Made by a program: the position numbers and the translations under genes
Origin: Guillardia theta CCMP2712
Taxonomy: Eukaryota; Protista; Cryptophyta
Direction: 5' to 3'
Length of the DNA: 64,000 nucleotides
NCBI RefSeq assembly: GCF_000315625.1
Contig: NW_005434482.1
Location: forward strand, 1 to 64,000
The notes under the pieces: model-generated
The model's database searches: none
What the model was told of the DNA's origin: nothing
The model's input: only the letters and a program-made list of their open reading frames with translations
Shown here: positions 304 to 59,830 of the stretch, in pieces
Numbering within the stretch: the first letter of the stretch is position 1
Layout: each line of letters opens with the position of its first letter

Positions 304-304
304 G

Positions 305-349
305 ATCATCATGATCATCCTCATCATCATCATGGTGGTCATGGAGAAG

Positions 350-5233: not shown

Positions 5234-5479
5234 TCTTGAGTCACCGTCACGGTGACGCAGTGCCAAGGGAGGGTCTGAACCTCCGACTCGAGTCCAGCTC
5301 AGATAGATCAGATGCCCCTCAGGGCCTGGCACTGGCGGCCTGACAACCGTAACCTTCTAAACAAACTTTCATATTCTCCGTAATCCGAGTTTACTTTCAG
5401 CACTCAAACAACTGCAAGTCCCCCCTCAGTCCAGCGCCGCCGGCCCATTCCTTCCTCACTGGGTCAGGCCAGTTCCAGC

Positions 5480-5600
5480 AGGCCGCCGCTCGGCAGTGAG
5501 GTGAGCTTCGCCGGGCCTGCCGGGCGGCCGCAGGGCCGCCCGGGCCCCGGCCCGCGGGGCCGGGCCGCGGCCCGGCGGCCGCCGATGATCTCCGCCAGTT
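5480..5600. promoter_or_regulatory. CCGG/GGCC-rich GC island between divergent genes
   Basis: Extremely GC-rich ccggg/ggccg run, with TGAGTCA at 5237 nearby. Regulatory role is inferred. Confidence 0.5.
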
Positions 5601-5699
5601 CGGACGGCACTGAGGGTGCTTGTGAAGTAGATTCCGAGTTTGAGAGTCGCGGCCCCTGCCCCGAGTCTCTTCATTCTCCATGGGACGGACCCTAGACCA

Positions 5700-7030
5700 C
5701 CTGGCACCCCACCCCCGCGGACTTTCCGCCGCCCCTGCGCTCCCACAGACCCCTGGTTATGACCCTATTTTGCCATTAAATGGAGGGGTAGTGATGCAAC
5801 CGAGAAGATTGTCAACATTCCAACGATGGCTGATACCCTGGCAGCCACCCCTACCCCCCCCCCCCCCCCGTACAGCATAGCTACTCTTATAACCCTATTG
5901 AGGTGACTACCGGTGGCTCATCCTGGAGTTAGACTAGAAAGATGGGGCACTATATGTAGGCGAGTCCTTATGGAGGTACCCCCACCCCCTCTACTTCAGT
6001 TCGGCCTCTTGTTGCCTTGATAGATTGTGACCAGTACTACCCCCCGATTATCCTCCCTCACTACACTCCCCAACCGGACTACTACCCCTAGTCCGATAGT
6101 CCGAGGATCAATACTCCCCTACCATTCCCCAATATGTACCCACCCTATCTACATGTAGAAGAGTCCCCTTAGAGTACTACCCCTCATTTTTCAACCACCC
6201 CCCGTCGGCGATCAGCCTTTTTCGCCTTGAGGCCAAGTTCGTTCCTTCAAGTACATCACCCACTCCACCCACCCCCTTTGGTATGAAAAATCAATTTTCA
6301 TGGCCACCCCTACCCCAAGTTTCCCAGGTAACTTAGGCATAACAACCCCCTCATCTATGAGCTTGGCTGACGGCCCCAACGTGACCCACCCCCCTTCCTT
6401 TCACTGTACGGTGACCGAAGTGATTCCAGTCCCCCAACTCCTCAGTACCGGAAATTTCAGTCAACTCAGGCATATCAATCCAGTCCAGTTTAATCCTGAG
6501 AGAAGACCACCCACCCTCCTATCTTCCAGGATTCTTGGGGGTAGTGCCGTATGTGTACACCCTCGAAAGTACCAAGATCAACCCCTATACCTCCCAGTAC
6601 CCCTACCCCCTACCCTACCCTGCTCTGATCAGTACGGTCGCGCCGTGACGGTCAGCAGGCACACGATGACCCCCCCATGTCTTCTGATGTTGATATGTTG
6701 ATTCGCCAGTCTATGACCCCACCCCTTCTGACCTCTCTTCGAGGACCCACCCCATCCCACACTCCTCTAGGCTTATTTACCCCTATCACGGCTAAACGGC
6801 ACACCCATAGCACGTACCCCTTCGAGAAGCAATAATCTGGATAACCCACCCTACTAGGCTACCCATTACCTCTATCCTCAGAAATCCACCCTACCCTTTG
6901 TTTGCGTCGACTACCCTCCACCCCCTTCCCTGTGGACATACGACTGGTAGTACCCCTGCGGACCGCCAGGCCACCACCCCTCGGAAGATATCACTTTGAT
7001 GGGGTCCCCTTCCATCCATTTGCCCCCTCC
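5700..7030. promoter_or_regulatory. ACCCC/TACCC-motif-rich non-coding upstream zone
   Basis: Many cacccc/tacccc motifs, mostly on the + strand, and no credible ORF. Lies between the GC island and the next + gene. Confidence 0.45.
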
Positions 7031-31579: not shown

Positions 31580-31670
31580 GACTTGCCCGGCCCCGGAGCC
31601 CGGTACACCTCCCGGCAACGGCGACAGTTACTCAAGGCCCGGCCCGGCCGGCCCGGTCCCGGTTACACTA
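31580..31670. promoter_or_regulatory. CCGG-rich GC island between divergent genes
   Basis: cccggccccggagcccgg...ggcccggcccggccggcccgg. Confidence 0.5.
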
Positions 31671-33253
31671 CTGCCTGGTCACGTTCATCGGAAAACCAGG
31701 TCTTACTGCGCCTGTCATCCACGTGTTTTTAGTTGACTAAAGTATGGAAGAAGGCAGCAGCTTCACAATAGGATATCAATTAGTGCACTCATAATTGACC
31801 AAGCTCTCATGGGACACCTCGGATGTCCAATTTGGCTATGACACGACAACGGTGTACCCCCCACCCCCTCAACTACCATGTCAACAACCCCTCCTTTGTC
31901 ATATGCCCCCCTTCTCCGCCCATCGATTTTTTTTTTCGGAGCCTTCCGGATGTCATGCTGCGTGTCATGCGGTCACATTGCAGGTTGATGGCATGTTTGG
32001 GTGGGTACTTTACAAATGGATTTCTGGGGTAGGGTACTGAGTCATGGAACAAGGAAGGTGACAAACGACCTCTTCCTTTTAAAAAAAACAATTATATCAG
32101 TATAATTATTCTTATTGACAAGGATGTAACGGAAAATTATAATTACTACACGGTTTATTCCTTATGGGTCCAAATGCTTATAATCTTTTTACGGTAGTCG
32201 ATTCGGCCTTGCTCTCTTCAAAACAATGGAATATCTTGAAATAGTTGTCTCTAGTTTGAAATGTACAAAAAGAATCAATTTCCAAATATGGATCGGTGTT
32301 GCCGAGGTGAGGACTCATTGGGCCCTGGGATCGGCAGTCCACGTTGGTCATTGACGAACACGTATATATCTGACCATATCTAGAGTTCATTTTTGTATGG
32401 CAAACACTATAAAAAGTATTGCAATGTTCCTCACAATCACCTTGTACCCCCGTTGTCGTATATCATTTACATCCTTATTAACTTACACCTAGGATCGGAA
32501 GTTCTATATTGTGTCATATTTCAGTACAAACATTACCTACTTTTTATAGTCCACAGAATCCCAGCAATATCTAGGACGTGCCAAACCCCAAGATATCTGT
32601 CTCATGGTTATGCTAATCTGGGGTCAAGGGATCTTACGATCGAATTGAAGGCTTCGGAGTCATAATTTTTCATAAGTCTAGTAAAGATGATTACTGAGAA
32701 GAGGGCACCTTGGGCTTCTGGCAAACGACGCTGATACGTATCAGCTAGGGGTACCTCTTCAAAAACAAGTTTTTGATGTAAGATTTGTGTCAGCAACCGA
32801 CATATTCTGCGAATCGTTGAGGATTTATGTAGTAAAGAGAGTACCATATTATCCTAATTGAAAGATATCTTGGACCCCACAAAGGGTCTCCCGTACCATA
32901 TCCAGCAAGATGTTTATCTACCCCCCATTGAACTATTCAAGATATCTATGAAGTACCCGGTACTAAAGTACCCCACCCCCCTTCGGAATCTCTTTTCGAA
33001 GTATCTCTCACCTCCTTTGTTTGGCCTCTTGCCCTGCGTTTGCCTGTCTGTAGCTTGACCCGCGCATTTCCCCTCCTCCTCCTCCTCCTCCTCCTCCTCC
33101 TTCCCCCGCTCCTTTTACTCTCCCTCCTCACTCCCCCCAATCCTCTCCCTTGCAGCGCCCATCTCCTTCAGTAACGCTTGTCTTGCTCTTCTCGCCCTTC
33201 CCTGTAGTCTCTTTTCTTTCTCGCTGTCTTTCCCTTCACACAACATTACTGTG

Positions 33254-33916
33254 ATGCAACGATACGGCGACATTCCTTTGGACTTGAGCTCCTGGCTAGT
33301 TCCTTCTCCGTTGAATCCTGTGCAGTCTCATTACAGCGCTTTCCCGAGCATCTTGCCTGTTTCTTTCCCTATCGCGGCTCAAAGTCTTCAGGTGGGTTCA
33401 TTGCACCCCATCATCCCCTCGGAGGACACCACCCTTCTACTCCAGCAGCAGCTGCGACTGATGGAGAGTCAGAATGCCATGAAGCAGAAGATGCTAATGG
33501 ACGCACTGACTTCTCTGGCCTCGACCAACATGCTGCTGCAACCTGCTGCAGTCACGATGGCAACCCCGGTCGTTGCACAGGAGATTGCTTCCCCCCCAAG
33601 TCAAGACATGACCCCAATCGACGCCGAGCAGGGCAAGAAAGGGAAGGTGATGAAGTCCAAGAAGAGCAAGCAGACCATGAGGAAGCGAAGCTTCTGGTCA
33701 GATGAGGAGCATCAGCTCTTTATGGACGCCCTCAAGAAGTACAACGTGAACCCAATGCGGGAGACAAAGGCGGACGGGAAGCTCTATGTTGGGCTGGGGC
33801 CGTACGTTGCCGACATGATCGCGATCGAGATCGGGACTAGAAATGCAGCGCAAGTCCGATCGCATGCGCAGAAGTACTTCCAGAAGACCTGCGTTAGTGC
33901 GCTACCAGCCAAGTGA
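33254..33916 (+). CDS. MYB-related SHAQKYF transcription factor (copy 1)
   Basis: WSDEEHQLFMDALKKY...IGTRNAAQVRSHAQKYF; single ORF with a Q/P-rich N-terminus. Confidence 0.95.
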   Translation: MQRYGDIPLDLSSWLVPSPLNPVQSHYSAFPSILPVSFPIAAQSLQVGSLHPIIPSEDTTLLLQQQLRLMESQNAMKQKMLMDALTSLASTNMLLQPAAVTMATPVVAQEIASPPSQDMTPIDAEQGKKGKVMKSKKSKQTMRKRSFWSDEEHQLFMDALKKYNVNPMRETKADGKLYVGLGPYVADMIAIEIGTRNAAQVRSHAQKYFQKTCVSALPAK

Positions 33917-34809
33917 AGTCCCGCTAGTTAAATGCTTGTTGTTATTCTTTGAATCCTGACGAAACATTCTCCCTTTCTAATGTTAAACCTCATCGCTCAA
34001 GTGGAGAAGACAGAGATGCACCTTCAGCTCTCAGCACTGTTTGAATGTCTTTTAAAGGTCCTTGCCCAATTTTCGAACCGCAAGGTCCCGATTTTAATAG
34101 ATCTGTGAAAGATACACCGAATGTCTTGAACGTACGTTTGAAATTTGCCCATGCTCAATCTATTGTTGGTCCACTCCCATCTCACATTCTATCGTTCAGC
34201 AGTATTCAGCCAGAGGTTGTTATGGAAATACTAAGACAAAGGAGAGTGATCACCACTTGTCACACAATAAATGGAAAGATCAAAATGGCAAATACGTCTA
34301 TCGCGTCAAAAGTAATATGATGCAGCTTGAAAAAGCAATTCATCATTCTATGGATCATTCAATGTTTCAATTCGCGGAATAGCGTCGTGATACTCGATAA
34401 AGTCATGATAAAGTTATGAAGCGTTTTCGAGGACTTTGCCATATCTCCGAGGGCTTCATGGAGCTTTCATACTCTCAACGGCTAGATTACAAACTTCTTC
34501 CTATCCGCAGCTGTAAGAAGTCTTCGGACCGAGAATGTCGTAGTTCCAGACAGGGACAGGCAGGGGCAAATATATGTGAGTGTGCTAGCAAATCTCCTTC
34601 TCAACATCTCTTCTTGTGAATTAGGAGATTACGGACATTATAGATACGCAACAAAGCATGTAATGGGATTATTCATCATGATTTCTTCGTAGAGCTGCGT
34701 GCTCTCATGTAAATTTGGCGACGTGGAGACCCTAGAGTTGGATCTATGTAGCCACTTGTACATATTCATTTGCTTAATGAAGACATATGATTAATAAAAT
34801 CGAGAACAG

Positions 34810-37663
34810 CAGCACGATGTCAATACCTCTCCAGACCTCTAGCTGCCGACTCATTACACACTCACACACTCAACGCATCATATCAACTCCTGATCTTCTC
34901 TCCCTCTTTCCCTCCTCTTGTCTTGAAGCTCATCCCACAATGCCCAGCTTCGTCTGGTAGTCCCATGGTATGAAGGCGCTCCTGTTCGTCCACACCCGTC
35001 AGTCTCTCCCTCCTCCCCCTCCTCTCCCTCCCCCTTCACCCCTCCTCTTCCTCCTTCCCCTCCTCCTCCTCCCTCGCTGACACACCAGCTCTCGTCGTAC
35101 ACGTAGCAGTAGGCGTCGTTGAACTGCTCAAGCCACGTCACTTCCTCCTTCCCCTCCTACCGCTGCCCCTTACCCATCCGCAGGTGCCTTGTCCTTGCAA
35201 GCACATCCACACCTCCTTCTTGTCCTTCAACATCTGCTTGCCCAGCCCCCCTGCCGTCCCTCTCACGTCACCCGCGTCGCGAGCGAGGCAGCAAGCTCAC
35301 CGGTGATGAAGGTCTTGAGGGGGTCCCGGCTGATGTTCTTCCAGCTGCTCCCGGCATAGCACTGCCACAGACTCGTCACGACCTTACGACCTCTTCTCAG
35401 CTCGTACCCCAGGGTTCCAATAGTCGTTCAGCATGTACAGGGGCATGGGCGCGGTCGATATGACCTTCATGTCGCTGTACATCTCAGTCCAGCCTCTCAT
35501 CAGCCCCTGTACAACCCGCGGCACGTGAGACCAGCACAGCCCCAGCTCCTCGCCTGCTTGCCTGGAGGATGGAGAACTTGTTGTCTACATACGGCGACAG
35601 CTCGGCGGTCAGCATGGCGTCCTGCCGGCTGCAGTGAGCAACAGAAGACAGCCATGCGGACGAGGCAACGCACATGCTCGGCTGACAAGACCTTGACGTG
35701 CAGTTGGAGAGTCGCTAAAGGGTACTGATAGGTCGAGAAGTGCAGATACGTCTGCCAGGCAGAGTGTAAGAAGTAGGAGATGCCGAGGACGTCAGTCTCA
35801 CTCCGTTGTAGGTAGCCGGGAAGCTCGTGACAAAGTCCATGACGGCCTGCAGCAGGTAGTGAGGAGGAGGAGGCGAGAGGAGGAGCGGCGCTCCTGGGCG
35901 CTTACCGAGTTGAGGAAGTCGTTGCCGCCATACGACAACATGCCGTACATGCCGTACATGCCGTACATGAAGTAATCCGGGTAGAGGTTCTCAATTGCGA
36001 GTTTGATTGACTTGTGCATTGGATAGGTGGAGTACATGTCGCCTGACGATCAAGTCTGTCAGCAGCTGTGCAGTAGGAGCGGCAGCTTCATCACAGGAAG
36101 GAGGAGGAGTCATGGTGCTGTTGCTGTCCTGCATGTTGTTTGCATAGCAGGTGTCGGTGATGTTCTGCCAGATGGTCTGAAACTGCCACGGCATCGCGTC
36201 TCCCAACCCATTGAGGCAGCAGCCCATGTACGACTGGTACGACGCCAGCGCCTCCTGCTCTTCCCGTCAGCCCCATGGCTTCCATGTCCTCCCCTCTCGT
36301 CGTCTGCTATTGTTGCTCATACCTGGCATTCCATCGAGCAAGCAAGTCCCATGTAAGACATGTAGGTGTAGTCCGTCACGGACATCGGTTCGGCGGGAAG
36401 GCCACATGCAGAAAGAACGGTACTCCACTTTGGCGCAAACTCAGCCTCGTTCATGTATCGCTCCGCACAGTAAGAGCCTTGGTCTGCTCGCATGCACCGT
36501 CATGACCCCCTCGTGACCCGACGCTTCCACTTGACCAATCGTCCCTCCCCTCATCTTCCTTCCCCCTCTATCACCCCCCCCCCCCTTTGCTGTCCTCGCC
36601 CTCTTCCTCTCTCTTCTCTTTATGTATCTCATGCTCCTCTTTCTCTCTCTCCCCTCTTTACCTTGGTAGCAGCCTGCGCTCGCAATCATGCTCATCCGAC
36701 TGTCTGGCTCGACAAGTGCAACCGCTTGCATCACCTGACGCGAGTCATCTCAGCCTTCCTCCCTCCAGGCTCCGCCTTCTCTCTCACCTTCATCCCGCAG
36801 GACGAGCAGAGCAGGCTCGCCCTCGCCTTGTAGTCACTCGAGGACCCGGTCATGGCCTCCAAGACAGCTGCAGGAGTGCATTGGTCGCACAGCTCCATCA
36901 CGTTGTTCATCACTTGATCCTCGTTGGACGACGCGGGCATGCTCATTTCTCCCTCCCCGCTTATCATCATCATCATCGTAGTCGCCATCTGGTACATCAT
37001 TTGCACGCAGTCGCTGCATATCACCTGCAGCCTCCATCACATGCCCCTCCCTCGCTAGCCCTCTCGCTCTGCTCCTCTTGCTCACCCCCATGGCAGCTTG
37101 CGGAGACTCGACGTTGCTGAGTTGGTCCAAACAAGCCGCAAACTGATTGTCGCGACAAGTCATGTTCCATGTTGTGATGGAGATGTTGATCATCGGACAA
37201 GCCATGAGCGAGCTCAGGTCTGCCTCCGACAGGCTCCCAACCATGTCAAGCATCCCCGACATGCACTCACACCCAGACGCCCTCGAGCTTGCATCGAAGA
37301 AGTCAAGCGTGGAGCAGTTGGTCATGGAGGAGGACATCTCCATCATGAGCGGGTTGCTCCACTGCTCGCAAGGGTCTCCCGACATGCTGCGGGTCTTGGC
37401 GCGCTGCTGCTTCGACGCGTCGGCCTTGTGCTTGGCCACGTGGACCTTGAGGGAGTGCGGGAGGTCCGAGAGGGAGGACGAGAGCTGCCCGACCCTGGTC
37501 TTGACCAGATCCAGGAAGTTGTGGGCATGTTGGGCCGGGGCAGCATGGCTGGCCTGTGTGTCAGTCTTGGCAGGCTCCCTCTGAAGTGCAGCAAGGGCGA
37601 GGGCTGGGAGGAGGAGGAGGAGGAGGAGGAGGATAGCGGAGAGCTTGGAGGGCATGGGGTCTT
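34810..37663 (-). repeat. Left arm of a 2.85-kb inverted duplication
   Basis: Reverse complement of 41777..44624. Ends match at cagcacgatgtcaatacctc (outer) and ggcatggggtctt (inner). Confidence 0.95.
34930..37655 (-). CDS. Secreted Cys/Met-rich protein of unknown function, about 13 exons (copy A)
   Basis: Signal peptide MPSKLSAILLLLLLLLPALALA; many Cys including a CxxxCQEALASYQSYxGCCLNG segment; several N-glycosylation sequons; ends PWDYQTKLGIVG*. Confidence 0.85.
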
Positions 37664-38027
37664 TGCAGGCGAAATTCCTGCCTCAAAAGTAAAAACAGGG
37701 CGACGAAATGAAGATGAGAAGGGCTGGTTTGTTCTTGATGAAGAGGTTGTTAGGTGTGAGGGTCACTATGATTGTCAATATTAGTCAAGTGGGAATGATG
37801 GGAAGTGAGGGAGGGAATTCGATTGAGGAAGAGGACAAGCAGGAGGAGGAGGAGAAAAAGGAAGGGGAGAGGAGGACAAGTTAAGGTCCAACGAGGAGCG
37901 GGGGAGGTCGAGGACGATGCTATATGGATGATCGCGAGCAAAGAAGGAGGAGGAGTCTAGAAAAAAGCCTGGCAATATTGTTGTGAAAACTGGATGATCA
38001 AAGTTCAATCGATAAGAAATAAAAGAT

Positions 38028-38066
<39 letters not shown>

Positions 38067-38161
38067 ACAATAATGGAGGTCATGATGATGGAGGAGATGA
38101 TGATGTAGCTGATGGAGAAGAAGAACACTATGATAATGATGGAGTACAAGAACATGATAAT

Positions 38162-38193
<32 letters not shown>

Positions 38194-38844
38194 CATGGTA
38201 GGGTGGTTCAGATGAAGTTAAAGATGAGCATCATGGTTCATGACGATTATGGTTCATGACAACAGCGGACGAGGAGAGAGGAGGAGGGATTTCCAACGCT
38301 ATTAGTGAGGGAGTGAGGGACAAGTAAGACATGTAAAAGGAGGGGAAGTTGACATATTGGTGATGCAAAATCATGGGGGGTAGGGGTAGTCTTATCCAGG
38401 GTTACCGCTGACTTCGTCCTCTTCACCCTCAAAAGGGGTAGGTGAATTGGGGTATTATGGACGGGTCCTGAAAAGCAAGTGATGCTGATGTGGGAGGGGT
38501 GGTGGCAGTGAAAATTAACTTGTCGTCGGCGGTGGGGTGCACCTTATGAGTAAAGTAAATTGTAAAAGTAAAGGTTTGTCCTTCTTTTTCAGTCAATAAA
38601 GTAAAAAAGTAAATTAAATAACACAACACCCTCTAATACTACTGACTAATAAGTCAGTACCATTAGTAATCCTCCGCGGATCTGGTGGTACTTAGTACCA
38701 GGCTACTACTGTGGTACTGTACTACACTAGTGCCGGAATCGCCGTCGAGTTTAAAATCATTCCTTGTGCTACTTTAAAACTCCGATATAGTACGGTAGCC
38801 TACTAGTACCGCAAATCTGTGCCGCAGTATTGCTGAGTCACTTC

Positions 38845-39160
38845 ACTTCGCCGCCGCCCCCCAGGCTCAGCAGCGGCGGTGGCGGGTCCCGTGGCCGGGC
38901 CCGGCGGCCCGGCTGATCGGACCGCCCGGCCGCTCACCGTACGGTACCGTCCGTCAGTCAGTGGCAGGCTGCCACATAAGTGTGCGGCCGCCGGCCCCGG
39001 CGCCCTCGGACCGGCACGGTACCGGCCCGGGCCCCGGCGGGGACCGTCCGGCGGACTGCCCGGGACTCAGGCTCACTGACAGCTGACCGTACCGTCTCCA
39101 TCTTCCCCCCGAGTTTCTGAAATAGTCACCGTCCGTTACATCGCCGCCGGGCCGGGACGT
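38845..39160. promoter_or_regulatory. CCGG-rich GC island (left inner) with GTAC/TACTAC-rich flank at 38630-38830
   Basis: Dense ccgg/ggcc, TGAGTCA at 38834, and a GGGGT zone at 38340-38560 toward the copy A start. Confidence 0.55.
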
Positions 39161-40699
39161 CAGAAAGTCACTCAAACCGTTCCAAGAGAATGTCAGCAGA
39201 TCCAAGTCAAGATACGATGATACAACGTCAAGTTCACAGTCATGCTGAGTGGGCAATAACCATTCAAAGATTGTCCATTCTGAAGAAGATTTTCATGCAG
39301 GGCTATTAGATGTGCAGTGCAGAGATAAGGGGAGATGCCGCTGGCGAGCTGATGGCCGCAAGAGAGAGCCTCGGAGAGAGAGAGTGCCCGCCGGCATTTG
39401 AAGACCAAAAGATAAATTTTGAACCGTAAAGAACTTGTGACCAGAGATTGCTGCCGCGAGATTGGAACATCGAGTCCGTTTCAAGGCATCTGAACATGTT
39501 TTGCAGTTGTACCTTGTTCGCCGATCCAGAAGTAGCTCTGAGTTATGCATGCCACAGCCTAGCTCCATGCCATGAAACTTCCGCCAGATCTCAGTCCTGG
39601 TAGTTCCATTTGATCCTACTCAAAGATCAAGAAGATTAGAATCGAATTAGCTCCGACAACTGTGTTTCCGACACAGTTCAGATATTCGAACTTGCGGCTA
39701 GAGAGAGAGCCTGATTGAAGAGAGGAGTCATCCGAATGTGTAAGGCTTGATAAAAATTGCATAACTTCAACTTTCAACAGCAACGGAAAACAATACCAAG
39801 AAAGAAAAAACTCCAGTGTAAACAATTCAACTAACCAAATATAAGATCAACATGATTCGGACTCGGGGGGGCGGCATGTAATCGGGGCCCATATGACGGA
39901 ATACAAGTTTGTTAGACTTGTACTAGTCCAAAGTCACGCAGATATCACATCGACAGGCTAAGTTGTAACAAGACAGTGATGGCAAGTTTTGCTCAAGACC
40001 GAGTTTAATGCACACAAAAACCAGAATTGAGGAGCACATGAGAGATAGACTGTATGCTAGGATGTGAAACCCAAGCAGACGGCTAGGAAGGCCTCCTCTT
40101 CATCACACGTACTACAATGCCGCCTTGACACGTAAGTCGTCTTGGTTTACAGGAGAGTTTTTGTTAACTCGGCGCTATCTGGCAGGCTGGCACGGCTGGC
40201 ATACGCTCCATCACGCATGGCACCCCGTGATGTGAGACTAGTAGCAGAGCAAGATAACGTATCCGAGGGACTGACTCGTGTAAGAGTGGCGAGGTAACGA
40301 GCGGCCAAGGTGTCCGCTCCTCTCTGAGCTTAAATAGTGTCGTAAATGATCTTGCTATGGTACCGTACGGTCAAGTCTCATCCTCGTAGTGAAGTACTCT
40401 ACCTGTCACTATCATTCAACGGTACTGAGTTTACGACGGAGTAGCCGCCAGGTCCACCGTACAACTCGGATGCCGTTGGGCATGGTATACATAACAGTCG
40501 GTATTCGCCTGATGAAGTACCAAAATGGCTACCCGACACGGTACCGGAGGTATTTCATATAAAACTTCATATTGCCCTTATGAGTTTTTGCTATTTCAGT
40601 TTCGGCATGACTCGGGGATGATGCTGTCAGTGTTGCATCGTTACAAGTGCAACGATGTCATGGGTACAACATCACCCCGCGACTGTCGAACGGTCCGAC

Positions 40700-41045
40700 A
40701 ACCCGGCGTCACGGCCGCGGCGTTGCACCCGGGCCGGCCGCCGGGCTGCGCCCGGATCATCGCCGGATCCCGGAGTCCCGGCGGAGTCTGCCAGACCGGT
40801 CTAGGCGGCAGTGGCCGTTCAAGTTGGCGCCCCCCGCGGCCGGGCGCGGCCCCCTCACCCATGGTCGGAGGCCGGGGCCCGGGTGCACCGGGGCGGAACT
40901 TGAGGCCGCCGTCCGGAGCCTGCAGTGGCCGGGCCCGGCGGCGGCCCGCCGGGCCGGGGCCCCGGGGCCCCCCCGCCGCCGGGGCCGGGAGCCGGGCCGA
41001 GAGGGGGGGGAGTCACAGTGAGTCACGTGACGACGTCGTCACGCG
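40700..41045. promoter_or_regulatory. CCGG-rich GC island (right inner)
   Basis: Dense ccgg/ggcc, TGAGTCA at 41019, CACGTG, and an 18-bp palindrome at 41026-41043. Confidence 0.55.
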
Positions 41046-41776
41046 GCGTTTGCAAGTGACTGAAAGATGAGTAACTAAAAGTATGGGCCCCTGCAGCATC
41101 GCAGAATGGCGCGCCCGCCTCGTCCGGTTGTCACCATGGTGGAGTCCGTGTCCTTTATGACCGCCAACCAGATTTTTTGATAGTCTTAAATCTATCTATG
41201 GTATTTCAAATTTCATCGAGATATTCCAACATGGTGGTGCAAACTTTTCAGAAATAAGAAGTGAGTTATTAGAAGTAAATTTTCTGCAAGTGAACCCTCA
41301 CAAATGAAAACAATTCAAGATATTAACAAAATTTGAAAACGTTTGAAACAATTTGAAATTATCAGAAATGTTCATGTCTTCAAAAACGATTTTTTTCATA
41401 CCCCCCGCTTGCCGCTTCCGCTCAATATCCCTTCGACCACGATGCTTCTGCAGTCGCGCCTGACTAACCCGTGTTCGCTCTCCATCCTCTCCTTGCCATG
41501 TCCAGTAGGGGTTCCTTTCGTTTCCCTTGGCTATTTTTTGCGTCCTTCGTTTCCTTCCCTTCTCTTGCTATGATTCGAGTCTCCCTGCTAGGCTGTACCT
41601 TGCTGCAATGCGGCATGATCGCTGCTGAAACCCTGCTCGTCATTTCGCTCCACTTCTCATCAGCTCTTGCGTTTTGCTTTTCGATGTGATCCTTTCTGTC
41701 TACCATCACATATTCTTTTCCTTTTTCTCGTAATCACACCAATTCTGAGCCATTTTGACTTTTGTCGCAGGGTGCT

Positions 41777-44624
41777 AAGACCCCATGCCCTCCAAGCACT
41801 CCGCTATCCTCCTCCTCCTCCTCCCAGCTCTCGCCCATGCTGCTCTTCCTGTCCAACAGCATGATACAAAGTCCAGCCATGCTGCCCCGGCCCAACATGC
41901 CCACAACTTCCTGGATCTGGTCAAGACCAGGGTCGGGCAGCTCTCGTCCTCCCTCTCGGACCTCCCGCACTCCCTCAAGGTCCACGTGGCCAAGCACAAG
42001 GCCGACGCGTCGAGGCAGCAGCGCGCCAAGACCCGCAGCATGTCGGGAGACCCTTGCGACTCGTGGAGCAACCCGCTCGTCATGGAGATATCCTCCTCCA
42101 TGACCAACTGCCCCATGCTTGACTTCTTCGATGCGAGCTCGAGGGCGTCTGGGTGTGAGTGCATGTCGGGGATGCTTGACATGGTTGGGAGCCTGTCGGA
42201 GGCAGACCTGAGCTCGCTCATGGCTTGTCCGATGATCAACATCTCCATCACAACATGGAACATGACTTGTCGCGACAATCAGTTTGCGGCTTGTTTGGAC
42301 CAACTCAGCAACGTCGAGTCTCCGCAAGCTGCCATGGAGGTGAGCAAGAGGAGCAGAGCGAGAGGGCTAGCGAGGGAGGGGCATGTGATGGAGGCTGCAG
42401 GTGATATGCAGCGACTGCGTGCGAATGATGTACCAGATGACGACTACGATGATGATGATGATAAGCGGGGAGGGAGAAATGAGCATGCCCGCGTCGTCCA
42501 ACGAGGATCAAGTGATGAACAACGTGATGGGGCTTTGCGACCAATGCACTCCTGCAGCTGTCTTGGAGGCCATGACCGGGTCCTCGAGTGACTACCAGGC
42601 AAGGGCAAGCCTGCTCTGCTCGTCCTGCGGGATGAAGGTGAGGGAAGAGGCGGAGCCTGGAGGGAGGAAGGCTGAGATGACTCACGTCAGGTGATGCAAG
42701 CGGTTGCGCTTGTCGAGCCAGACAGTTGGATGAGCATGATTGCGAGCGCAGGCTGCTACACAGGTGAAGAAGGGAGGGAGAGGAAGAAGGGCATGGATGG
42801 ACAAAAGGAAGAGAGCGAGCAAGGGAGGGAGAAGGGAGAGTTGGGGAAGGAAGATGAGGGGAGGGATGTGCGGTGAAGTGGAAGCGTCGGGTCACGAGGG
42901 GGTCATGACGGTGCATGCGGGCAGATCAAGGCTCTTACTGTGCGGAGCGATACATGAACGAGGCTGAGTTTGCGCCAAAGTGGAGTACCGTTCTTTCTGC
43001 ATGTGGCCTTCCCGCCGACCCGATGTCCGTGACGGACTACACCTACATGGGCTTCATGGGACTTGCTTGCTCGATGGAATGCCAGGTATGAGCAACGATA
43101 GCAGACGACGAGAGGGGAGGACATGGAAGCCATGGGGCTGACGGGGAGAGCAGGAGGCGCTGGCGTCGTACCAGTCGTACGTGGGCTGCTGCCTCAATGG
43201 GTTGGGAGACGCTATGCCGTGGCAGTTTCAGACCATCTGGCAGAACATCACCGACACCTGCTATGCAAACAACATGCAGGACAGCAACAGCACCATGACT
43301 CCTCCTCCTTCCTGTGATGAAGCTGCCGCTCCTACTGCACAGCCGCTGACAGACTTGATCGTCAGGCGACATGTACTCCACCTACCCAATTGAGAAGTAC
43401 GCTGTCATTGCCTTTGAGAATCTCTCCCCGGATCACTTCATGTACGGCATGTACGACATGTACGGCATGTCGTGGTATGGCGGCAACGACTTCTTCAACT
43501 CGGTAAGCGCCCAGGAGCGCCGCTCCTCCTCTCGCCTCCTCCTCCTCACTACCTGCTGCAGGCCGTCATGGACTTTGTCACGAGCTTCCCGGCTACCTAC
43601 AACGGAGTGAGACTGACGTCCGCGCCATCTTCTACTTCTTATACTCTGCCTGGCAGACGTATCTGCACTACTGGACATATCAGTACCCCTTGACGACTCT
43701 CCACCTGCACGTCAAGGTCTTGTCAGCCGAGCATGTGCGTTGCGCTCATCCGTCTGGCTGCCTTCTGTTGCTCACTGCAGCCGGCAGGACGCCATGCTGA
43801 CCGCCGAGCTGTCGCCGTATGTAGACAACAAGTTCTCCATCCTCCAGGCAAGCAGGCGAGGAGCTGGGGCTGTGCTGGTCTCACGTGCCGCGGGTTGTAC
43901 AGGGGCTGATGAGAGGCTGGACTGAGATGTACAGCGACATGAAGGTCATATCGACCGCGCCCATGCCCCTGTACATGCTGAACGACTATTGGAACCCTGG
44001 GGTACGAGCTGAGAAGAGGTCGTAAGGTCGTGACGAGTCTGTGGCAGTGCTATGCCGGGAGCAGCTGGAAGAACATCAGCCGGGACCCCCTCAAGACCTT
44101 TATCACCGGTGAGCTTGCTGCCTCGCTCGCGGCGCTGGTGACGTGAGAGGGACGGCAGGGGGGCTGGGCAAGCAGATGTTGCCGTACAAGAAGGAGGTGT
44201 GGATGTGCTTGCAAGGACAAGGCACCTGCGGATGGGTAAGGGGCAGCGGTAGGAGGGGAAGGAGGAAGTGACGTGGCTTGAGCAGTTCAACGACGCCTAC
44301 TGCTATGTGTACGACGAGAGCTGGTGGGTCAGCGAGGGAGGAGGAGGAGGGGAAGGAGGAAGAGGAGGGGAAGGAGGAAGAGGAGGGGTGGAGGGGGAGG
44401 GGGAGGGGGCGGAGAAGGAGGACGGTGAAACTGACGGGTGTGGGACGAGCAGGAGCGCCTTCATACCATGGGACTACCAGACGAATCTGGGCATTGTGGG
44501 ATGAGCTTCAAGACAAGAGGAGGGAAAGAGGAAGAGAAGATCAGGAGTTGATAGGATGCGTTGAGTGTGTGAGTGTGTAATGAGTAAGCAGCTATAGGTA
44601 TGATGAGGTATTGACATCGTGCTG
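41777..44624 (+). repeat. Right arm of the inverted duplication
   Basis: Matches the left arm; paired ORFs are near-identical (e.g. 43946..44290 versus 35119..35463). Confidence 0.95.
41785..44504 (+). CDS. Secreted Cys/Met-rich protein of unknown function, about 13 exons (copy B)
   Basis: Exon 1 41785-42339, exon 2 42401-42637, exon 3 from 42691; stop at 44504 (PWDYQTNLGIVG*). Signal peptide present; likely GC donor near 43848. Confidence 0.85.
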
Positions 44625-45257
44625 ATTCATTACGAAAGACAAGAGAAGCTTGGTGATGTTTTCAAATGGAGAATGGTTTCGTGAAGGCAATAAACTTGTC
44701 TGACTGTTCAAATATCATTTGTACTCAGCTTTCGCTGATAGTCATTATTATTCACGCAACTTGAGAAGAGGTTTTTCAATGAGTCATTCAGATGTCCTTC
44801 AAGCGAGAGATGATACTTATTCTGGTTTATCTTGACTTATTTTCTTGCAGTGTTGGCAAGGTGGAGCATATTTTGTTTCTGATTGCGAAAATGAAAAACT
44901 CGACCTGCTGTATCAACTTTGCAATTCCTTTTGCATTTTTTCGATCTACCACATTGATGGTATATCTCCATTGCATGCACCCAAACATTTTGTACAGTTT
45001 CCAACAAGCAATAAACTTTTTCTGATAGAAATGACATCGTTACCTACAAGGCGTGTCGAAAGTCCTCGAAAACAAGGAATTGTGGACAAGTATCGAGTCG
45101 GGGAACGAATTCTTCAAGTCGTCAATGAAATATTTTGGATTAATTTGGTTTATTGATCTAGGAAAAGCAACCAGGACAATATTTTACACGAAATCTGCCA
45201 CATAAGATGGAAAACTGCCCGCCATAACACAGGAGGAGGGAGATAGAGCAAGGAAGG

Positions 45258-45860
45258 TTACTCCTGCACAGGGGACGTCCTGCTCCTCTGACGAGAGAGA
45301 CGCTGGAAGTACTTCTGAGCATGAGATCGGACCTGCGAGACTGTCCTCGTTCCAATGTCCATGGCAATCAGGTCGGCCACGTGTGGCCCAAGGCCAGCGT
45401 ACATCCTGCCGTCCTCCTTAGTCTCTCTGTTGCAGCTGATGTTGAACTTCTTGAGAGCATCGAGAAACTTTTGATGCTCTCTTGGCGACCACATGCTCCG
45501 CTGCACAGACTTGGGCATGTGGCCGGTAGAGGGAGCAGCCCGGGGCTCCCCCCTGTTGGCTTGCTCCTCCTCAGCCTCCAGCGCTGAGTCCGACTCTGAC
45601 GTGCAGTAGCTGTCGTCGGAGTTGGTGTTGGACTCTCTCTCGTGCTGCTCCATGCCTGCCTCCTTGGGGAACGTCTTGGCATAGATCATCATGATCCTGG
45701 GAGATTCTTCCTGAGCCGAAGGAAGAGCTTGCATCTCTTCCTCTTGGAAAGCAAAGAGAGAGGGGGAGGGCGATTGTCTTTCAGGAAAGACAAAGGAGTC
45801 CTCTGGGAAGAGAGCGGCGATTGCATCAACCAAACTGACTTCGTCCTGATAAACTTGCAT
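45258..45860 (-). CDS. MYB-related SHAQKYF transcription factor (copy 2)
   Basis: WSPREHQKFLDALKKF...IGTRTVSQVRSHAQKYF. Confidence 0.95.
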   Translation of the reverse strand: MQVYQDEVSLVDAIAALFPEDSFVFPERQSPSPSLFAFQEEEMQALPSAQEESPRIMMIYAKTFPKEAGMEQHERESNTNSDDSYCTSESDSALEAEEEQANRGEPRAAPSTGHMPKSVQRSMWSPREHQKFLDALKKFNISCNRETKEDGRMYAGLGPHVADLIAMDIGTRTVSQVRSHAQKYFQRLSRQRSRTSPVQE

Positions 45861-47059
45861 CTTGGTATGTGAGATGGTTTCAAACGGGTTCTGATGGGAG
45901 GGGAAGGTGACTGTCAGGCAGACGAAGGAAGGGAGGTGTAGATTCTTGTTTGTTGTTGGGGAGGATGGAAGAGGTCAGGCAAGAACAAGTAGAGGAGGTA
46001 GGAGATGGCAAAGCTTGTTGGGGAGCAGGAGCGTGAGTAGAGGGGAGGGGAAGAAGGTAGAAGAAGGGAGAAAGGAGGGGGAGCCTTGAAGCTGTGCTGA
46101 ACGGAAAGATGTCTTTTCGACAAAGATGACGTAACCCCTAACATCTGAGATCCAAGGAAAACACTCCAGTTCGGAAATTCTTTGCCCCCTGTCCATGAAG
46201 CGATGCCATTTGGAGGAAGTGGGGTTCAAGGTCCATTGACGAAAATGTATCGAAAAGGTGTATTTCCATGCTCTCCGGTCATCAGTGCACGGCCACCCTG
46301 TAAAACCAACCCTTAAATTAGATCTCAATCACCAGATCCGATGACAGTAAAGTCTCCGGGACGGGTCTTCAATTTCCTGTAAGGGGGGGTGGGGGTCTTA
46401 CCCTTTGCACGTAGCTTTCATGGCTCAAAAAGATCGCAGAATCGTCTAGAGCCTGCATGGGTGGCCCCTTCTCCCAGTCGTTTGTGTTTTGTGCTCTTAC
46501 CCCTCTAAGGTTTACATTTTCTTAAATGAGAGCATATGCAAGCAAGGGTATCCTCAATGGATGCGTCATAGTGCTGCCGTGGGCCTGCTGCGTCCTTTCG
46601 GGGTCTCCACTGCCGTCCCGTCCTCCGGCCCTCTTCAGCCCCCGGGTGCTGCTGACGAAAAAAAGAGTCTATAAAAAGGTAAGGGAAACTATATCCGGTA
46701 CACGTGGAATTGTGAAACGATGCTGTTTCAGAAGAAGGGGAATGCGTGCCCGAATCCTCATGGGGAGGGGTGGACTTCCCCTTGTTGCTAGGACTGGATT
46801 GGGCGGGGTACTCGAATTTGAGGCCGTCGTTAACCAAAAAAAAGGCGTGCCCGACGGTTTCCAATTCGTCCGTTAAAACTCAACGGTGTCCCGTCTACTA
46901 CTACTCCTGATTGTCATCGTACTGATCTTTAACTTAACTTTGAGTAAAGAACATGAGGAGTAGACCAGCCTCCTTGCACAAATGTTTAGTCAACTTGGCA
47001 AAGGGAGGGCCATTCGAAGTTTGAAGTTCAAACTTCAACCGATGGGGAACTTCGGAACT

Positions 47060-47380
47060 TCCCGGGAGTCCGGCCGCCGCTTGGCAACGTGCCCGCCGGG
47101 CCGTGGAACCGGCGGACCCGGCCGGCACACGCCGGGCGGGGCAGTGCAGTGCGGCGGACCGTACCGCCGGTCGGCCGCGGGGGCCGGGCACTGCGGAATG
47201 CGCACGCCGGGCACTGCGGCAGTCGCGGCGGCGGCCCGGCGGACCGTGACTGTACTACGGTACTCCAGTCGGATCGGATCGGACCGTCGACCGCTGGCAT
47301 CTACCGTCAGGCTAGGCCCTACGGCGTGACACTGTGACACGGTCACCGGTCCGGTATTCATCTCGCTGGGCCGCAGTGTA
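47060..47380. promoter_or_regulatory. CCGG-rich GC island upstream of MYB copy 2
   Basis: Dense ccgg/ggcc, GTAC-rich flank, TGAGTCA at 47446. Confidence 0.5.
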
Positions 47381-47709: not shown

Positions 47710-48614
47710 TCATGACTTGTCACGATCATCGAAGATGGATGACTTGCGTTTCCCAAGCGGCACGAAATGTATGCTGTTGTCCCAAGAGGCTTGCTTCTTC
47801 TTTTTGGAGATGTTTTGAAAGTATTTCTGGGCGTGCGATCGTACTTGAGCGACAGTGCGCGTTCCGATGTCCATGGCGATGAGGTTTGCGACGTGGGGGC
47901 CAAGCCCCACGAACATCTTGCCATCCCCGTCCTCTTCTCGCTTCGTGTTGATGTTGTACTTGTTCAGGGCTTCAAGAAACTTGGCATGCTCCTCTTTCGT
48001 CCACATCATCCTTGGCTTTTCCGATGGAGATCCTCCTCCTTCTGGGCTGGAGCCAGTATTCCTCGCGCCTTCCGGCTTACGTTGTGCAGCATTGCTGCTA
48101 GAGGAAGGCATCGAGTGGCTTGCGTCCTGGTGAAAGAGCAAATGGGGTGTAAACCTGCACGGATGACCTTGAACCTCTGCTGCAGGGCTGACGAGCAGTG
48201 TTGGATTACAGCTGAGCTGTCGATGAGCAGGGTCGCGAAAGTCCAGAGGAGAAGAGAGAACAGGAGCTGGCAAAGCTGCACACTGAAGAGGCTCGTCGAG
48301 GCTGATGGTATGCGGGCGCGGCATATCGCACTGAAGCAGCGCGGTTGAAACCGAATGGTCGAAGTCGAACTTAGACGGCAGGTGGTTTTGTACCGCACCC
48401 GCTAGGTTGACGGAAGAAGAGGAGGGGTTGAGAAGATAGCATGCTGGTTGGCAGCATAGGAAGCTTGCCTGTCGAAGTCTGCAGAGAGTTCGCTGGAAGG
48501 GAGAGCCGATGTTTCCGTATCGATCGGGCAAGGGTGCGGCCAGCCTTGCTCACCCTCAGGGAACAAAGCCGCGATAGCGTCGTCAATGCTCAGTGTATCT
48601 GGTTTCTTCTGCAT
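47710..48614 (-). CDS. MYB-related SHAQKYF transcription factor (copy 3), two coding exons
   Basis: WTKEEHAKFLEALNKY...VRSHAQKYF. Exon 1 48614-48554 (MQKKPDTLSIDDAIAALFPE) joins 48401 in frame through a GTGAGC...TAG intron. Confidence 0.9.
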
Positions 48615-59134: not shown

Positions 59135-59434
59135 TTTTCTTTCACACTTTGTCCTACGGCACGAACTGCTTTGCTCGGCTTTGTTATGTCACGCAGCACA
59201 AGATCTTTTCATGCACCGATCTGTATCTTAGATGACAGCGTTGAGCTTGTACCTCCTCCTCCCCTGCACACACACACGCCCGACGCGGCTTCTCCTCCTG
59301 ATCACATCGCCTGCTTCACGTTCTCGACATTCCATTTCGCTTGTATGTCGGGCCCGAATAGTGCGTGCATAATAGGGTAGCTGAAGATGGGGGGTGGGTA
59401 CTCAAAGTTAAGTTAAAAATCCGATCATCATCAG

Positions 59435-59830
59435 TCCCCGGGCCGGCCCGGCGGGCAGGCCGGGCCCGGGCCGGGCGGCGATCGTCATCACGCGGCCGGT
59501 CACCGGTCAGGAGTCACCGTGCCACGGTCACGCCCGGCCGGGCCCAGGCAGTGTCACCGACTCGGAGTCGTCGGCTCGGATCCGATCAGCCCGGACTCTC
59601 CGAGGCCCGGACTCTCCGAGGCTCCCGGCCCGGAGTCCGCCGTAGCCTGACTCAGTAAAACTTTCCGAGCGTGGCCCTCAGGGCCTTAAAGATCGGACGG
59701 TACCGTCCAAGCCTATCAGCCGGGCCCGGCCCTCCGAGCTCGGAGGCTCGGAGACTGAGTCGAGGAGCGGCTTGACCCTGACACACCGTTCGTGTCACAC
59801 TGGCAGGCCAAACGGCGAGGCCCCCGAAGA
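59435..59830. promoter_or_regulatory. CCGG-rich GC island between divergent genes
   Basis: Dense ccgg, tandem ccggactctccgaggc x2, TGACTCA at 59648, and an ACCCC zone at 60160-60360. Confidence 0.55.

What the first reader, a model, noticed from the sequence alone, without database searches (positions are those of the whole stretch)
31580..47380. Mirror-symmetric transcription factor plus secreted-protein cassette: island-MYB> <X [island-core-island] X> <MYB-island
Seen in sequence: two copies of an unknown secreted Cys/Met-rich gene face outward from a 4.1-kb spacer bounded by two GC islands. Each copy converges, 0.6-0.9 kb past the arm end, on a SHAQKYF MYB gene that has its own upstream island, and a third MYB follows. 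Gene order is symmetric over about 16 kb, but nucleotide similarity is visible only over the X genes, while the MYBs are strongly diverged. Inference: an old inverted duplication of a regulator-effector module, kept as a unit. It is a candidate co-regulated system (cell-surface or periplast variation, self-recognition, or a life-stage/mating switch) that I cannot match to anything described.
Basis: partly seen in the sequence, partly recalled or inferred. Interest (0 to 1): 0.8.

Follow-up and report, generated by a model that had tools for sequence, protein, structure and literature searches.

The report
Inverted gene pair inside MYB cluster
Two near-identical, back-to-back copies of a cryptophyte-only secreted cysteine-rich protein gene sit between much older MYB transcription-factor paralogs, so the mirror image is real but looks like an ordinary gene palindrome kept alike by gene conversion, not a duplicated regulator-plus-target module.

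Summary
The layout is real. The window is Guillardia theta CCMP2712 scaffold JH993156.1. Two 2.86-kb inverted arms (34810-37667 and 41773-44624, about 95% identical) face away from a unique 4.1-kb spacer.

- **Gene X:** each arm is one transcription unit of 14 exons, from about 45 nt before the ATG to 119 nt after the stop. X-left is GUITHDRAFT_148161. Spliced RNA contigs confirm 12 of its introns.
- **X protein:** about 615 aa, with a signal peptide, 26 Cys, 8.6% Met and 7 N-glycosylation sequons. No Pfam, PDB or Atlas match. Relatives were found only in a Hanusia-like transcript and one metagenome contig.
- **MYBs:** each X converges on an atypical SHAQKYF MYB, and a third MYB follows.

The "old regulator-effector module duplication" reading is not supported. 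The X copies differ by dS 0.07, with perfect tracts up to 339 nt, which indicates gene conversion. The three MYBs share only the 64-aa domain, with saturated synonymous sites. MYB2 has a Hanusia ortholog that matches 63 of 64 domain residues. The spacer has no mirror symmetry in sequence.

The best reading is an X-only palindromic duplication inside an old MYB cluster, like the Drosophila Amy and Hsp70 pairs. Other notes from this scan (unchecked) report further MYB clusters and other gene-body-limited inverted duplicates in this genome. X function and any MYB-X regulation remain untested.

The parts
31600..31800 (.).
   Evidence: 7 CCGG in 200 nt but GC only 0.54, below the island threshold
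33251..33916 (+). MYB1: intronless atypical SHAQKYF MYB (220-221 aa); transcript about 33134-34110
   Evidence: ORF; PF00249 at 25.1 bits against a cut-off of 24.4; unspliced RNA contigs 33134-34110 and 3'-biased raw RNA reads; annotated as a 220-aa gene in L002
34810..37667 (-). Left arm = gene X-left (GUITHDRAFT_148161). CDS 37655 to 34929 in 14 exons, 615 aa. Weaker homology continues to about 37700.
   Evidence: Inverted repeat; 12 spliced joints in RNA contigs of two studies; model built and translated; identical to P0026 except for a 10-aa annotation insert at GC-AG intron 9
35308..35648 (.). Longest perfect identity tract between the arms (339 nt, exons 9-11 with the introns between them)
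   Evidence: Permutation test, P < 5e-5. It includes introns with 0 mismatches, so recent gene conversion rather than coding constraint.
36000..36042 (-). Cluster of changes specific to X-left in exon 6
   Evidence: In the bin 36000-36099, 12 of 14 differences match X-right in the outgroup L001; exon 6 has 23 of 83 exonic differences
37668..41772 (.). Unique 4.1-kb spacer between the two X starts. No gene found and no mirror symmetry in sequence.
   Evidence: No Rfam family; no Pfam hit on its ORFs; no annotated gene; only low-complexity repeats
38801..39180 (.). CCGG island 1 (GC 0.69), 1.15-1.5 kb from the X-left ATG
40641..41140 (.). CCGG island 2 (GC 0.73), 0.65-1.1 kb from the X-right ATG
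   Evidence: It shares sub-motifs with island 1 in direct order (families D4-D6).
41773..44624 (+). Right arm = gene X-right. CDS 41785-44505 in 14 exons, 610 aa, intact. Weaker homology starts at about 41741.
   Evidence: Exons mapped from the arm alignment; all splice sites kept (GT-AG, and GC-AG at intron 9); annotated as a 663-aa gene over the same span. The upstream 28 nt aligns with the relative L001.
45258..45860 (-). MYB2: intronless atypical SHAQKYF MYB (200 aa); transcript at least 46064 to 45131
   Evidence: ORF; PF00249 at 29.5 bits; transcript contig L003 99.9% identical; Hanusia ortholog P0003
47001..47380 (.). CCGG island 3 (GC 0.69), 1.1-1.5 kb upstream of MYB2
47710..48531 (-). 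MYB3: third atypical SHAQKYF MYB (273-aa ORF), in tandem with MYB2
   Evidence: ORF; PF00249 at 32.7 bits; 46 of 64 domain identity to MYB2. Expression not checked.

Best explanation
The core is a gene palindrome. A single 14-exon gene (X) was duplicated in inverted, head-to-head orientation, and the two copies have since been kept alike by patchy arm-to-arm gene conversion. X encodes a signal-peptide-bearing, disulfide-rich, Met-rich glycoprotein found only in the Guillardia/Hanusia clade.

The duplicated unit is the transcription unit alone, from about 45 nt upstream of the ATG to 119 nt past the stop. This pair lies between MYB1 and MYB2, two convergently oriented members of a much older local cluster of three atypical SHAQKYF MYB paralogs. 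An outward-facing pair placed between two convergent paralogs is automatically mirror-symmetric.

The CCGG islands are a compositional feature of several long intergenic regions of this window. They add apparent symmetry without any sequence symmetry.

Shown: the arms, the gene model, expression of X-left, MYB1 and MYB2, the age contrast, and the conversion signature.
Inferred: that the MYBs were never part of the duplicated unit; that X enters the secretory pathway; that there is no dedicated MYB-X regulatory link.
For: - **Arms and boundaries:**
- **Splicing:** RNA contigs from two studies give 12 joints and match X-left exactly, including 59 nt beyond the arm end.
- **Both copies intact:** 14 exons, all splice sites kept, dS 0.069, dN 0.041, exon mismatch 4.5% against intron 4.9%.
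- **Conversion signature:** mismatches are strongly clustered, with perfect runs of 339 and 202 nt, P < 5e-5.
- **Outgroup:** each arm is about 14% from contig L001 and about 5% from the other arm. Differences between the arms split 55:60 between the two lineages.
- **MYB age:** 41-46 of 64 domain identity, pS 0.70-0.74, no similarity outside the domain. MYB2 against Hanusia P0003 is 63 of 64 in the domain and 80% overall.
- **X against its Hanusia-like homolog:** only 53% aa.
- **Spacer:** no genes, RNA families or mirrored sequence.
- **Known analog:** Drosophila Amy-p/Amy-d and Hsp70 palindromic pairs, with concerted evolution confined to the coding region (PMC3924832).
- **Unchecked scan notes:** at least four other SHAQKYF MYB clusters and other gene-body-limited inverted duplicates in this genome.
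Against: - A sharp switch from about 90% identity to no homology at the arm ends is also what an ancient, larger duplication would show if conversion had shrunk to the gene body.
- Divergence rises towards both arm ends, which fits conversion-tract edges.
- MYB2 is slightly closer to MYB3 than to MYB1. That is compatible with an early inverted split of MYB1 from MYB2 followed by a tandem split of MYB2 from MYB3.
- Four of the six CCGG islands or patches of the window fall in this 16-kb stretch.
- I could not count the MYB subfamily in the genome myself.
- The right arm's junctions were not checked with reads.
Confidence: 0.6

Rival explanations
1. Ancient inverted duplication of a whole [MYB + X] module. 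The MYB copies and the intergenic DNA then diverged to saturation, while continuous gene conversion kept only the X transcription units alike.
For: - Gene order and orientation are symmetric, with similar X-to-MYB distances of 894 and 634 nt.
- The conversion signature is present.
- Divergence rises towards the arm edges.
- Concerted evolution confined to coding regions is known for palindromic pairs (PMC3924832).
- MYB2-MYB3 similarity is greater than MYB1-MYB2, which is compatible with this order of events.
Against: - No residual similarity outside the MYB domain or in the X-MYB intergenic DNA.
- The MYB splits predate the Guillardia/Hanusia split (63 of 64 against 43 of 64), so X would need unbroken conversion over that whole time.
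- Even the least-homogenised patches of the arms (11-13%) are closer to each other than to L001.
- Only one X type was recovered from the Hanusia-like transcriptome.
Confidence: 0.2
2. Whatever the origin, the neighbouring MYBs regulate the X genes through sites in the spacer or islands, forming a local regulator-target system.
For: - Physical proximity.
- X-left, MYB1 and MYB2 are all transcribed.
- An unchecked scan note reports another MYB-plus-orphan cassette elsewhere in this genome.
Against: - No shared or mirrored motif in the two X upstream regions beyond -45.
- In RNA run X15, MYB1 depth is about 3 against about 0.25 for X-left.
- X has no other homologs, so recurrence of the linkage cannot be tested in this genome, and two metagenome scans were blank.
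- By the scan's notes the MYB family forms several clusters with unrelated neighbours.
Confidence: 0.1
3. The arms act as recombination substrates that flip the 4.1-kb spacer. That would swap the two different upstream regions between the two slightly different X variants, giving a slow surface-variation switch.
For: - 2.86-kb arms at 95% identity with perfect tracts up to 339 nt are adequate substrates.
- Homology starts almost at the ATG, so an inversion would exchange the complete upstream regions.
- Spacer inversion is known for palindromes (my general knowledge).
Against: - No read evidence for the alternative orientation. Short-read contigs cannot span the arms, and only one read-laying run was allowed.
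- The variants differ little (92% aa).
- No XR-type RNA contig was seen.
Confidence: 0.06
4. Assembly artefact (alleles or a fold-back chimera mis-joined as an inverted repeat), or a transposon with very long terminal inverted repeats.
For: Inverted near-identical repeats are a common artefact. Another 99% inverted repeat sits at the very start of the scaffold (1-305 and 794-1098).
Against: - No gaps between 28929 and 49882.
- DNA contigs of both the left and right sequence types are present in equal numbers, 15 and 15.
- A DNA contig (33139-34878) and independent RNA contigs bridge the left outer junction. A DNA contig (37642-38020) reaches across the inner left junction.
- The two arms have different unique flanks, and the X-right upstream matches the relative L001.
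- Against a transposon: no target-site duplication and no transposase or other ORF match in the spacer.
Confidence: 0.04

Closest known systems
Drosophila palindromic paralog pairs Amy-p/Amy-d and Hsp70Aa/Hsp70Ab (ectopic gene conversion; review PMC3924832)
   Same: - Two paralogs in mirror-image orientation across a short unique spacer.
- The paralogs are more alike within the species than either is to its ortholog.
- For Amy, concerted evolution is confined to the gene while the flanks evolve independently.
- Here the arms are 5% apart against 14% to the relative, homology is limited to the transcription unit, and perfect tracts are present.
   Different: - Here the gene has 13 short introns that are homogenised along with the exons.
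- The protein is a fast-evolving lineage-specific orphan, not a conserved enzyme or chaperone.
- Shared polymorphism, the classic proof of ongoing conversion, was not tested.
Sex-chromosome palindromes of mammals (PMC3403216, PMC8981503)
   Same: Inverted arms around a unique spacer, kept alike by arm-to-arm gene conversion (abstracts seen).
   Different: Those arms are tens of kb to Mb long, over 99% identical, and hold several genes. These arms are 2.86 kb, about 95% identical, and hold exactly one gene.
SHAQKYF-class MYB-related transcription factors (CCA1/LHY/RVE type; the 'MYB-SHAQKYF' class in algae, PMC4827209)
   Same: A single MYB repeat with the SHAQKYF motif in the recognition helix. 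The Pfam Myb_DNA-binding model is matched above its cut-off.
   Different: - An insertion of about 20 aa (…N-x4-RE-x3-DG-x2-Y-x-GLGP-x-VA…) splits the Pfam match into two stretches, and the second conserved Trp is absent.
- The genes are intronless and clustered.
- The same insertion type occurs in Hanusia, Rhodomonas and environmental sequences.
Lineage-specific secreted cysteine-rich orphan families
   Same: An N-terminal signal peptide, an even number of conserved Cys (26), N-glycosylation sequons, fast evolution (53% aa to the Hanusia-like homolog, against 80% for the neighbouring MYB2), and recent duplication.
   Different: No membership can be assigned: there is no Pfam, PDB or Atlas match. 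The 8.6% Met content, including an MMMM run, is unusual.

Membership tests
Gene palindrome / inverted segmental duplication with gene conversion | Two arms in inverted orientation with high identity around a unique spacer | tested here: met
   Arms at 34810-37667 and 41773-44624, about 95% identical; 4105-nt spacer with no internal symmetry
Gene palindrome / inverted segmental duplication with gene conversion | Paralogs closer to each other than to the ortholog in a close relative | tested here: met
   About 5% between the arms against about 14% from each arm to metagenome contig L001. The copy number in that relative is unknown.
Gene palindrome / inverted segmental duplication with gene conversion | Mosaic divergence: long perfect tracts next to diverged patches, not explained by coding constraint | tested here: met
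   Perfect runs of 339 and 202 nt, and a densest 60-nt window with 20 mismatches; permutation P < 5e-5 for the longest run (0 of 20,000 shuffles) and < 2e-4 for the densest window (0 of 5,000). Introns 1, 6, 9, 10 and 12 have 0 mismatches, while intron 3 has 18 of 157.
Gene palindrome / inverted segmental duplication with gene conversion | Polymorphisms shared between paralogs in a population (ongoing conversion) | not testable with these tools
   Only one strain's assembly was available and one read-laying run was allowed
   Homology ends 119 nt after the X stop. The only similarity beyond is the 177-nt MYB domain at 72%.
   X pair dS 0.069 against MYB domain pS 0.70-0.74, which is saturated. 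MYB2 matches its Hanusia ortholog at 63 of 64 but MYB1 at 43 of 64. Conversion of X could mask an equal age.
   X has no other homolog in this genome or in 1.84 billion representatives, apart from a Hanusia-like transcript and one 2.6-kb contig without flanks. Two metagenome scans were blank.
   Both are in the RNA contigs of two studies. One raw RNA run shows MYB1 at depth about 3 and X-left at about 0.25. No binding data.
SHAQKYF-class MYB-related factor | Single MYB repeat recognised by the family model | tested here: met
   PF00249 at 25.1, 29.5 and 32.7 bits against a cut-off of 24.4 for MYB1, MYB2 and MYB3
SHAQKYF-class MYB-related factor | SHAQKYF motif in the third helix | tested here: met
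   VRSHAQKYFQ is present in all three
SHAQKYF-class MYB-related factor | Canonical contiguous domain of about 50 aa with regularly spaced Trp or hydrophobic residues | tested here: not met
   The Pfam match is split into two stretches for MYB2 and MYB3 and covers only model positions 4-20 in MYB1. There is an insertion of about 20 aa and no second Trp. So this is an atypical subfamily.
DNA transposon with long terminal inverted repeats | Target-site duplication and a transposase or other mobility gene between the repeats | tested here: not met
   The flanks cgagaacag| and |attcattac do not repeat. No Pfam hit on the spacer ORFs.

The most novel reading that the evidence does not exclude
The pair may be the remnant of an old MYB-X / X-MYB module in which the regulators diverged while the effector was held identical by conversion. 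One surface glycoprotein would then sit under two different control regions, and recombination between the arms could flip the spacer and swap those regions. More broadly, gene-body-limited inverted duplicates may be a recurrent, mechanistically specific feature of the Guillardia genome: unchecked scan notes report the same pattern for a MYB pair and an RWP-RK pair.
Probability: 0.12. Interest if true: 0.6.

Novelty: new member of a known kind. Interest (0 to 1): 0.3.

Why it matters
It adds a clean, expressed example of a one-gene palindrome with a gene-conversion signature in a cryptophyte nuclear genome. It corrects the public model of GUITHDRAFT_148161, which misses a GC-AG intron. It also defines a small orphan family of secreted, Cys- and Met-rich glycoproteins restricted to the Guillardia/Hanusia clade, which is a reasonable candidate for a cell-surface or periplast component. 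It does not reveal a new regulatory system. If the scan's other notes hold, the recurrence of gene-body-limited inverted duplicates in this genome would deserve a genome-wide survey.

Tried and rejected
**Identifying X.** All of these came up empty.
- Pfam on the ORFs and on the full-length homolog P0021 gave only sub-threshold noise: DUF2333, Conotoxin and zf-C4pol.
- The PDB sequence search had a best E-value of 1.1.
- The ESM Atlas gave no usable hit.
- AlphaFold2 on a 4-sequence alignment gave mean pLDDT 36.6 and pTM 0.30. I did not send this model to a fold search, because a low-confidence model gives meaningless matches.

**Finding X relatives.**
- The word-index search with exon 1 found only P0001.
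- The exhaustive HMMER search found only P0001 and P0021.
- The search with P0021 found only the window's own P0026.
- Two metagenome-contig scans, one with N-terminal and one with C-terminal patterns, confirmed nothing.

**Other checks.**
- The spliced X proteins have no reference, so I did not paste them into any tool. P0026 and P0021 stood in for them.
- The transposon reading is rejected: no target-site duplication and no mobility gene.
- A non-coding RNA in the region is rejected at Rfam gathering thresholds.
- A mirror-symmetric spacer is rejected.
- Positive selection as the cause of the exon 6 patch is not supported: nd 16.5 of 114 against sd 6.5 of 24.
- Papers: no text mentions GUITHDRAFT_148161, and no paper gave a Guillardia SHAQKYF count.
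- The MYB tree on 64 columns had no well-supported branches, so I used only identities and the ortholog comparison.

Full report
**Identity of the sequence.** A protein found with the X family (P0026, [quoted passage not shown]) led to NCBI scaffold JH993156.1 of assembly GCA_000315625.1. The fetched 22.7-kb locus is 100% identical to the window and has the same coordinates. The window is therefore positions 1-64000 of that scaffold. The stretch 28929-49882 has no N runs.

- Repeat finding, a self-BLAST and a full alignment show one inverted repeat with arms at 34810-37667 and 41773-44624. It is 93% identical with gaps and 95-98% in ungapped blocks. The spacer is 4105 nt and unique.
- The only other similarities in the area are the MYB domains: 33707-33883 against 45303-45479 at 72%, and 45304-45494 against 47816-48006 at 74%.
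- MYB1 (33251-33916, +), MYB2 (45258-45860, -) and MYB3 (47710-48531, -) all pass the Pfam Myb_DNA-binding cut-off and carry SHAQKYF.
- MYB1 and MYB2 end 894 and 634 nt from the arm ends.
- No further MYB or X-like sequence is in the 64 kb.

**What X really is.** Assembled contigs from two studies (runs X1 and X3) lie on the left arm with 12 joints that remove 46-178 nt. The tool lists their kind as RNA only as a guess, but all joints are GT-AG on the minus strand except one GC-AG, which shows the contigs come from spliced RNA.
- With one more intron inferred from the reading frame and the contig end, X-left is a 14-exon gene: CDS 37655 to 34929, 615 aa.
- It equals the public model P0026 except that the annotation missed the GC-AG intron 9 and reads 10 extra residues. 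The cDNA-derived homolog P0021 lacks these residues.
- X-right (41785-44505) keeps every splice site and an open frame of 610 aa.
- The RNA contigs match X-left without a single difference and run 59 nt past the arm end. X-left is therefore expressed, and its 3' flank is confirmed independently of the assembly. No XR-type RNA contig was seen, which does not prove X-right is silent.

**The X protein.**
- It has one N-terminal hydrophobic segment (a signal peptide) and no other membrane span.
- It has 26 Cys at the same aligned positions in both copies (an even number) and mostly kept in P0021, 8.6% Met including an MMMM run, 5.2% Tyr, and 7 N-x-S/T sequons.
- There are weak internal repeats of a CxxC-containing module of about 50-70 aa.
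- Pfam, the PDB and the ESM Atlas give nothing, and the AlphaFold model is unusable at pLDDT 36.6.
- An exhaustive HMMER search of 1.84 billion representatives with exon 1 found only two clusters. One is P0001, on metagenome contig L001, which is 86% identical in DNA to both arms over 2.6 kb. The other is P0021, a transcript-derived protein whose cluster holds a Hanusia phi sequence.
- P0021's transcript L004 encodes the same kind of signal peptide. It is 53% identical to X.
- X is thus an orphan family of the Guillardia/Hanusia clade. I infer that it enters the ER and is secreted or placed on the cell surface. Because cryptophyte plastid-directed proteins also start with a signal peptide, a periplastidal destination is not excluded (my own knowledge, untested).

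**Age and mode of the X duplication.**
- Between the copies, dS is 0.069 and dN is 0.041. Exons (4.5%) and introns (4.9%) differ equally. Coding constraint is therefore not what keeps the arms alike.
- The 148 mismatches are far from evenly spread. There are perfect runs of 339 nt (35308-35648, covering three exons and the introns between them) and 202 nt. The densest 60-nt window has 20 mismatches. No shuffle reached either extreme: 0 of 20,000 for the runs and 0 of 5,000 for the densest window. This mosaic is the signature of gene conversion.
- With L001 as outgroup, each arm is about 14% from it, and the arms are about 5% from each other. The differences split 55:60 between the two lineages, in patches. 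One cluster of 12 changes specific to X-left lies in exon 6, and one cluster of 9 specific to X-right lies in the signal-peptide region.
- Even the least homogenised patches (11-13%) are closer between the arms than to L001.
- Homology extends to about 45 nt upstream of the ATG through a conserved TTTTGACTTTTRTCGCAG-like element that L001 shares. It ends 119 nt after the stop. Beyond that the flanks are unrelated.

**The MYBs are much older.**
- MYB1, MYB2 and MYB3 share 41-46 of 64 domain residues and nothing outside the domain, apart from 20-40 extra alignable residues between MYB2 and MYB3.
- Their synonymous sites are saturated (pS 0.70-0.74).
- MYB2 has a Hanusia phi ortholog, P0003, that is 80% identical over its full length and matches 63 of 64 residues in the domain. 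All three MYB lineages therefore predate the Guillardia/Hanusia split.
- MYB1 and MYB2 are transcribed without introns.
- The domain carries an insertion of about 20 aa that also occurs in Hanusia, Rhodomonas and many environmental sequences.
- Notes of this scan, which I could not check, report at least four further clusters of such MYBs in this genome, one paired with another orphan gene. They also report two other inverted duplicates (a MYB pair and an RWP-RK pair) whose homology is limited to the gene.

**Spacer and islands.**
- The spacer has no annotated gene, no Rfam family and no Pfam match.
- Its two CCGG islands (38801-39180 and 40641-41140) share only GGCCCGG-type motifs. The sub-motifs they do share lie in direct order, not mirrored.
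- Similar islands occur at 5381-5740 and 59381-59700, outside the finding. One sits upstream of MYB2 (47001-47380). The one claimed upstream of MYB1 is only a weak patch.
- The islands lie roughly 0.6-1.6 kb upstream of gene starts in long intergenic regions. Their apparent symmetry follows from the gene orientations.

**Explanation.**
- The most economical reading is an inverted duplication of the X transcription unit alone, later homogenised in patches by arm-to-arm conversion. It lies between two convergent members of an old MYB cluster. I give this 0.6.
- It works like the palindromic Amy-p/Amy-d and Hsp70 pairs of Drosophila. There, paralogs are more alike than orthologs, and for Amy, concerted evolution is confined to the gene while the flanks evolve independently (PMC3924832).
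A sharp homology edge cannot tell the two readings apart, but nothing positive supports the module.
- A MYB-to-X regulatory link (0.1) has no support beyond proximity. In one RNA run that looks like 3'-end tag sequencing, MYB1 has depth about 3 and X-left about 0.25.
- Spacer flipping (0.06) is untested.
- Artefact or transposon readings (0.04) are unlikely, given the bridging contigs, the presence of both sequence types in DNA, the distinct flanks, the lack of a target-site duplication and the lack of a mobility gene.

**Limits.**
- Only one read-laying run was allowed, so the right arm's junctions, X-right expression and the spacer's orientation were not examined.
- The genome-wide MYB count rests on unchecked notes.
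- The spliced X proteins could not be handed to the search tools as such. P0026 and P0021 were used instead.

Noticed in passing
window 35507-35561 (X-left) and 43848-43902 (X-right): Intron 9 of X is a GC-AG intron (GCAAGC...ACAG) in both copies. The public model GUITHDRAFT_148161 misses it and carries a spurious 10-aa insert (ASRRGAGAVL) that the Hanusia-like cDNA lacks.
   Followed up: yes
window 37668-37700 and 41741-41772; L001:19-46: A conserved element, TTTT(G/T)ACTTTT(G/A)(T/A)(C/G)GCAG, lies 20-45 nt upstream of the X ATG in both copies and in the metagenome relative. It could be a core promoter or 5' UTR element, or the acceptor of an unannotated 5' UTR intron.
   Followed up: partly
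window 33669 (inside MYB1): DNA and RNA contigs of three runs follow MYB1 up to 33669 and then continue with different sequence (CAAGAAGTCCGCGGTGAAGAAGGG...). A second locus or transcript shares the 5' half of MYB1 at 95% or more.
   Followed up: no
window 38500-38699: Summed contig depth in the DNA run is 26.6, against about 2-10 elsewhere on the stretch. This probably marks a dispersed repeat in the spacer, an AT-rich stretch just before CCGG island 1.
   Followed up: no
window 38801-39180, 40641-41140, 47001-47380, 5381-5740, 59381-59700: CCGG/GGCC-rich islands (GC 0.68-0.73, up to 23 CCGG) built of GGCCCGG-type palindromic motifs. The two spacer islands (38801-39180 and 40641-41140) carry AGTCAC/GTGACT and ACGT-core (GACGTC, CACGTG) motifs at or next to them; the other islands were not checked for these. 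Only compositional similarity links the islands.
   Followed up: partly
window 36000-36042 (exon 6 of X-left), 43371-43420 in X-right: A cluster of about 12 substitutions plus a 3-nt indel specific to X-left within about 50 nt. That is too many for independent point mutations at the arm-wide rate. It suggests a single multi-nucleotide event or conversion from an unknown donor. The dN/dS there is below 1.
   Followed up: partly
window 1-305 and 794-1098: A 99% identical inverted repeat of 305 nt sits at the very start of the scaffold. It could be a real hairpin-like structure or an end-of-scaffold assembly artefact.
   Followed up: no
window 38030-38200: Microsatellites (GCT)13 and (ATG)n/(GAT)n lie in the spacer, about 400-550 nt upstream of the X-left ATG.
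   Followed up: no
L004:40-201: The Hanusia-like X transcript encodes 54 more N-terminal residues than the database protein P0021, including the signal peptide MPCKLSSYTLLLLLLPALAFAAL. The stored protein starts at an internal Met.
   Followed up: yes
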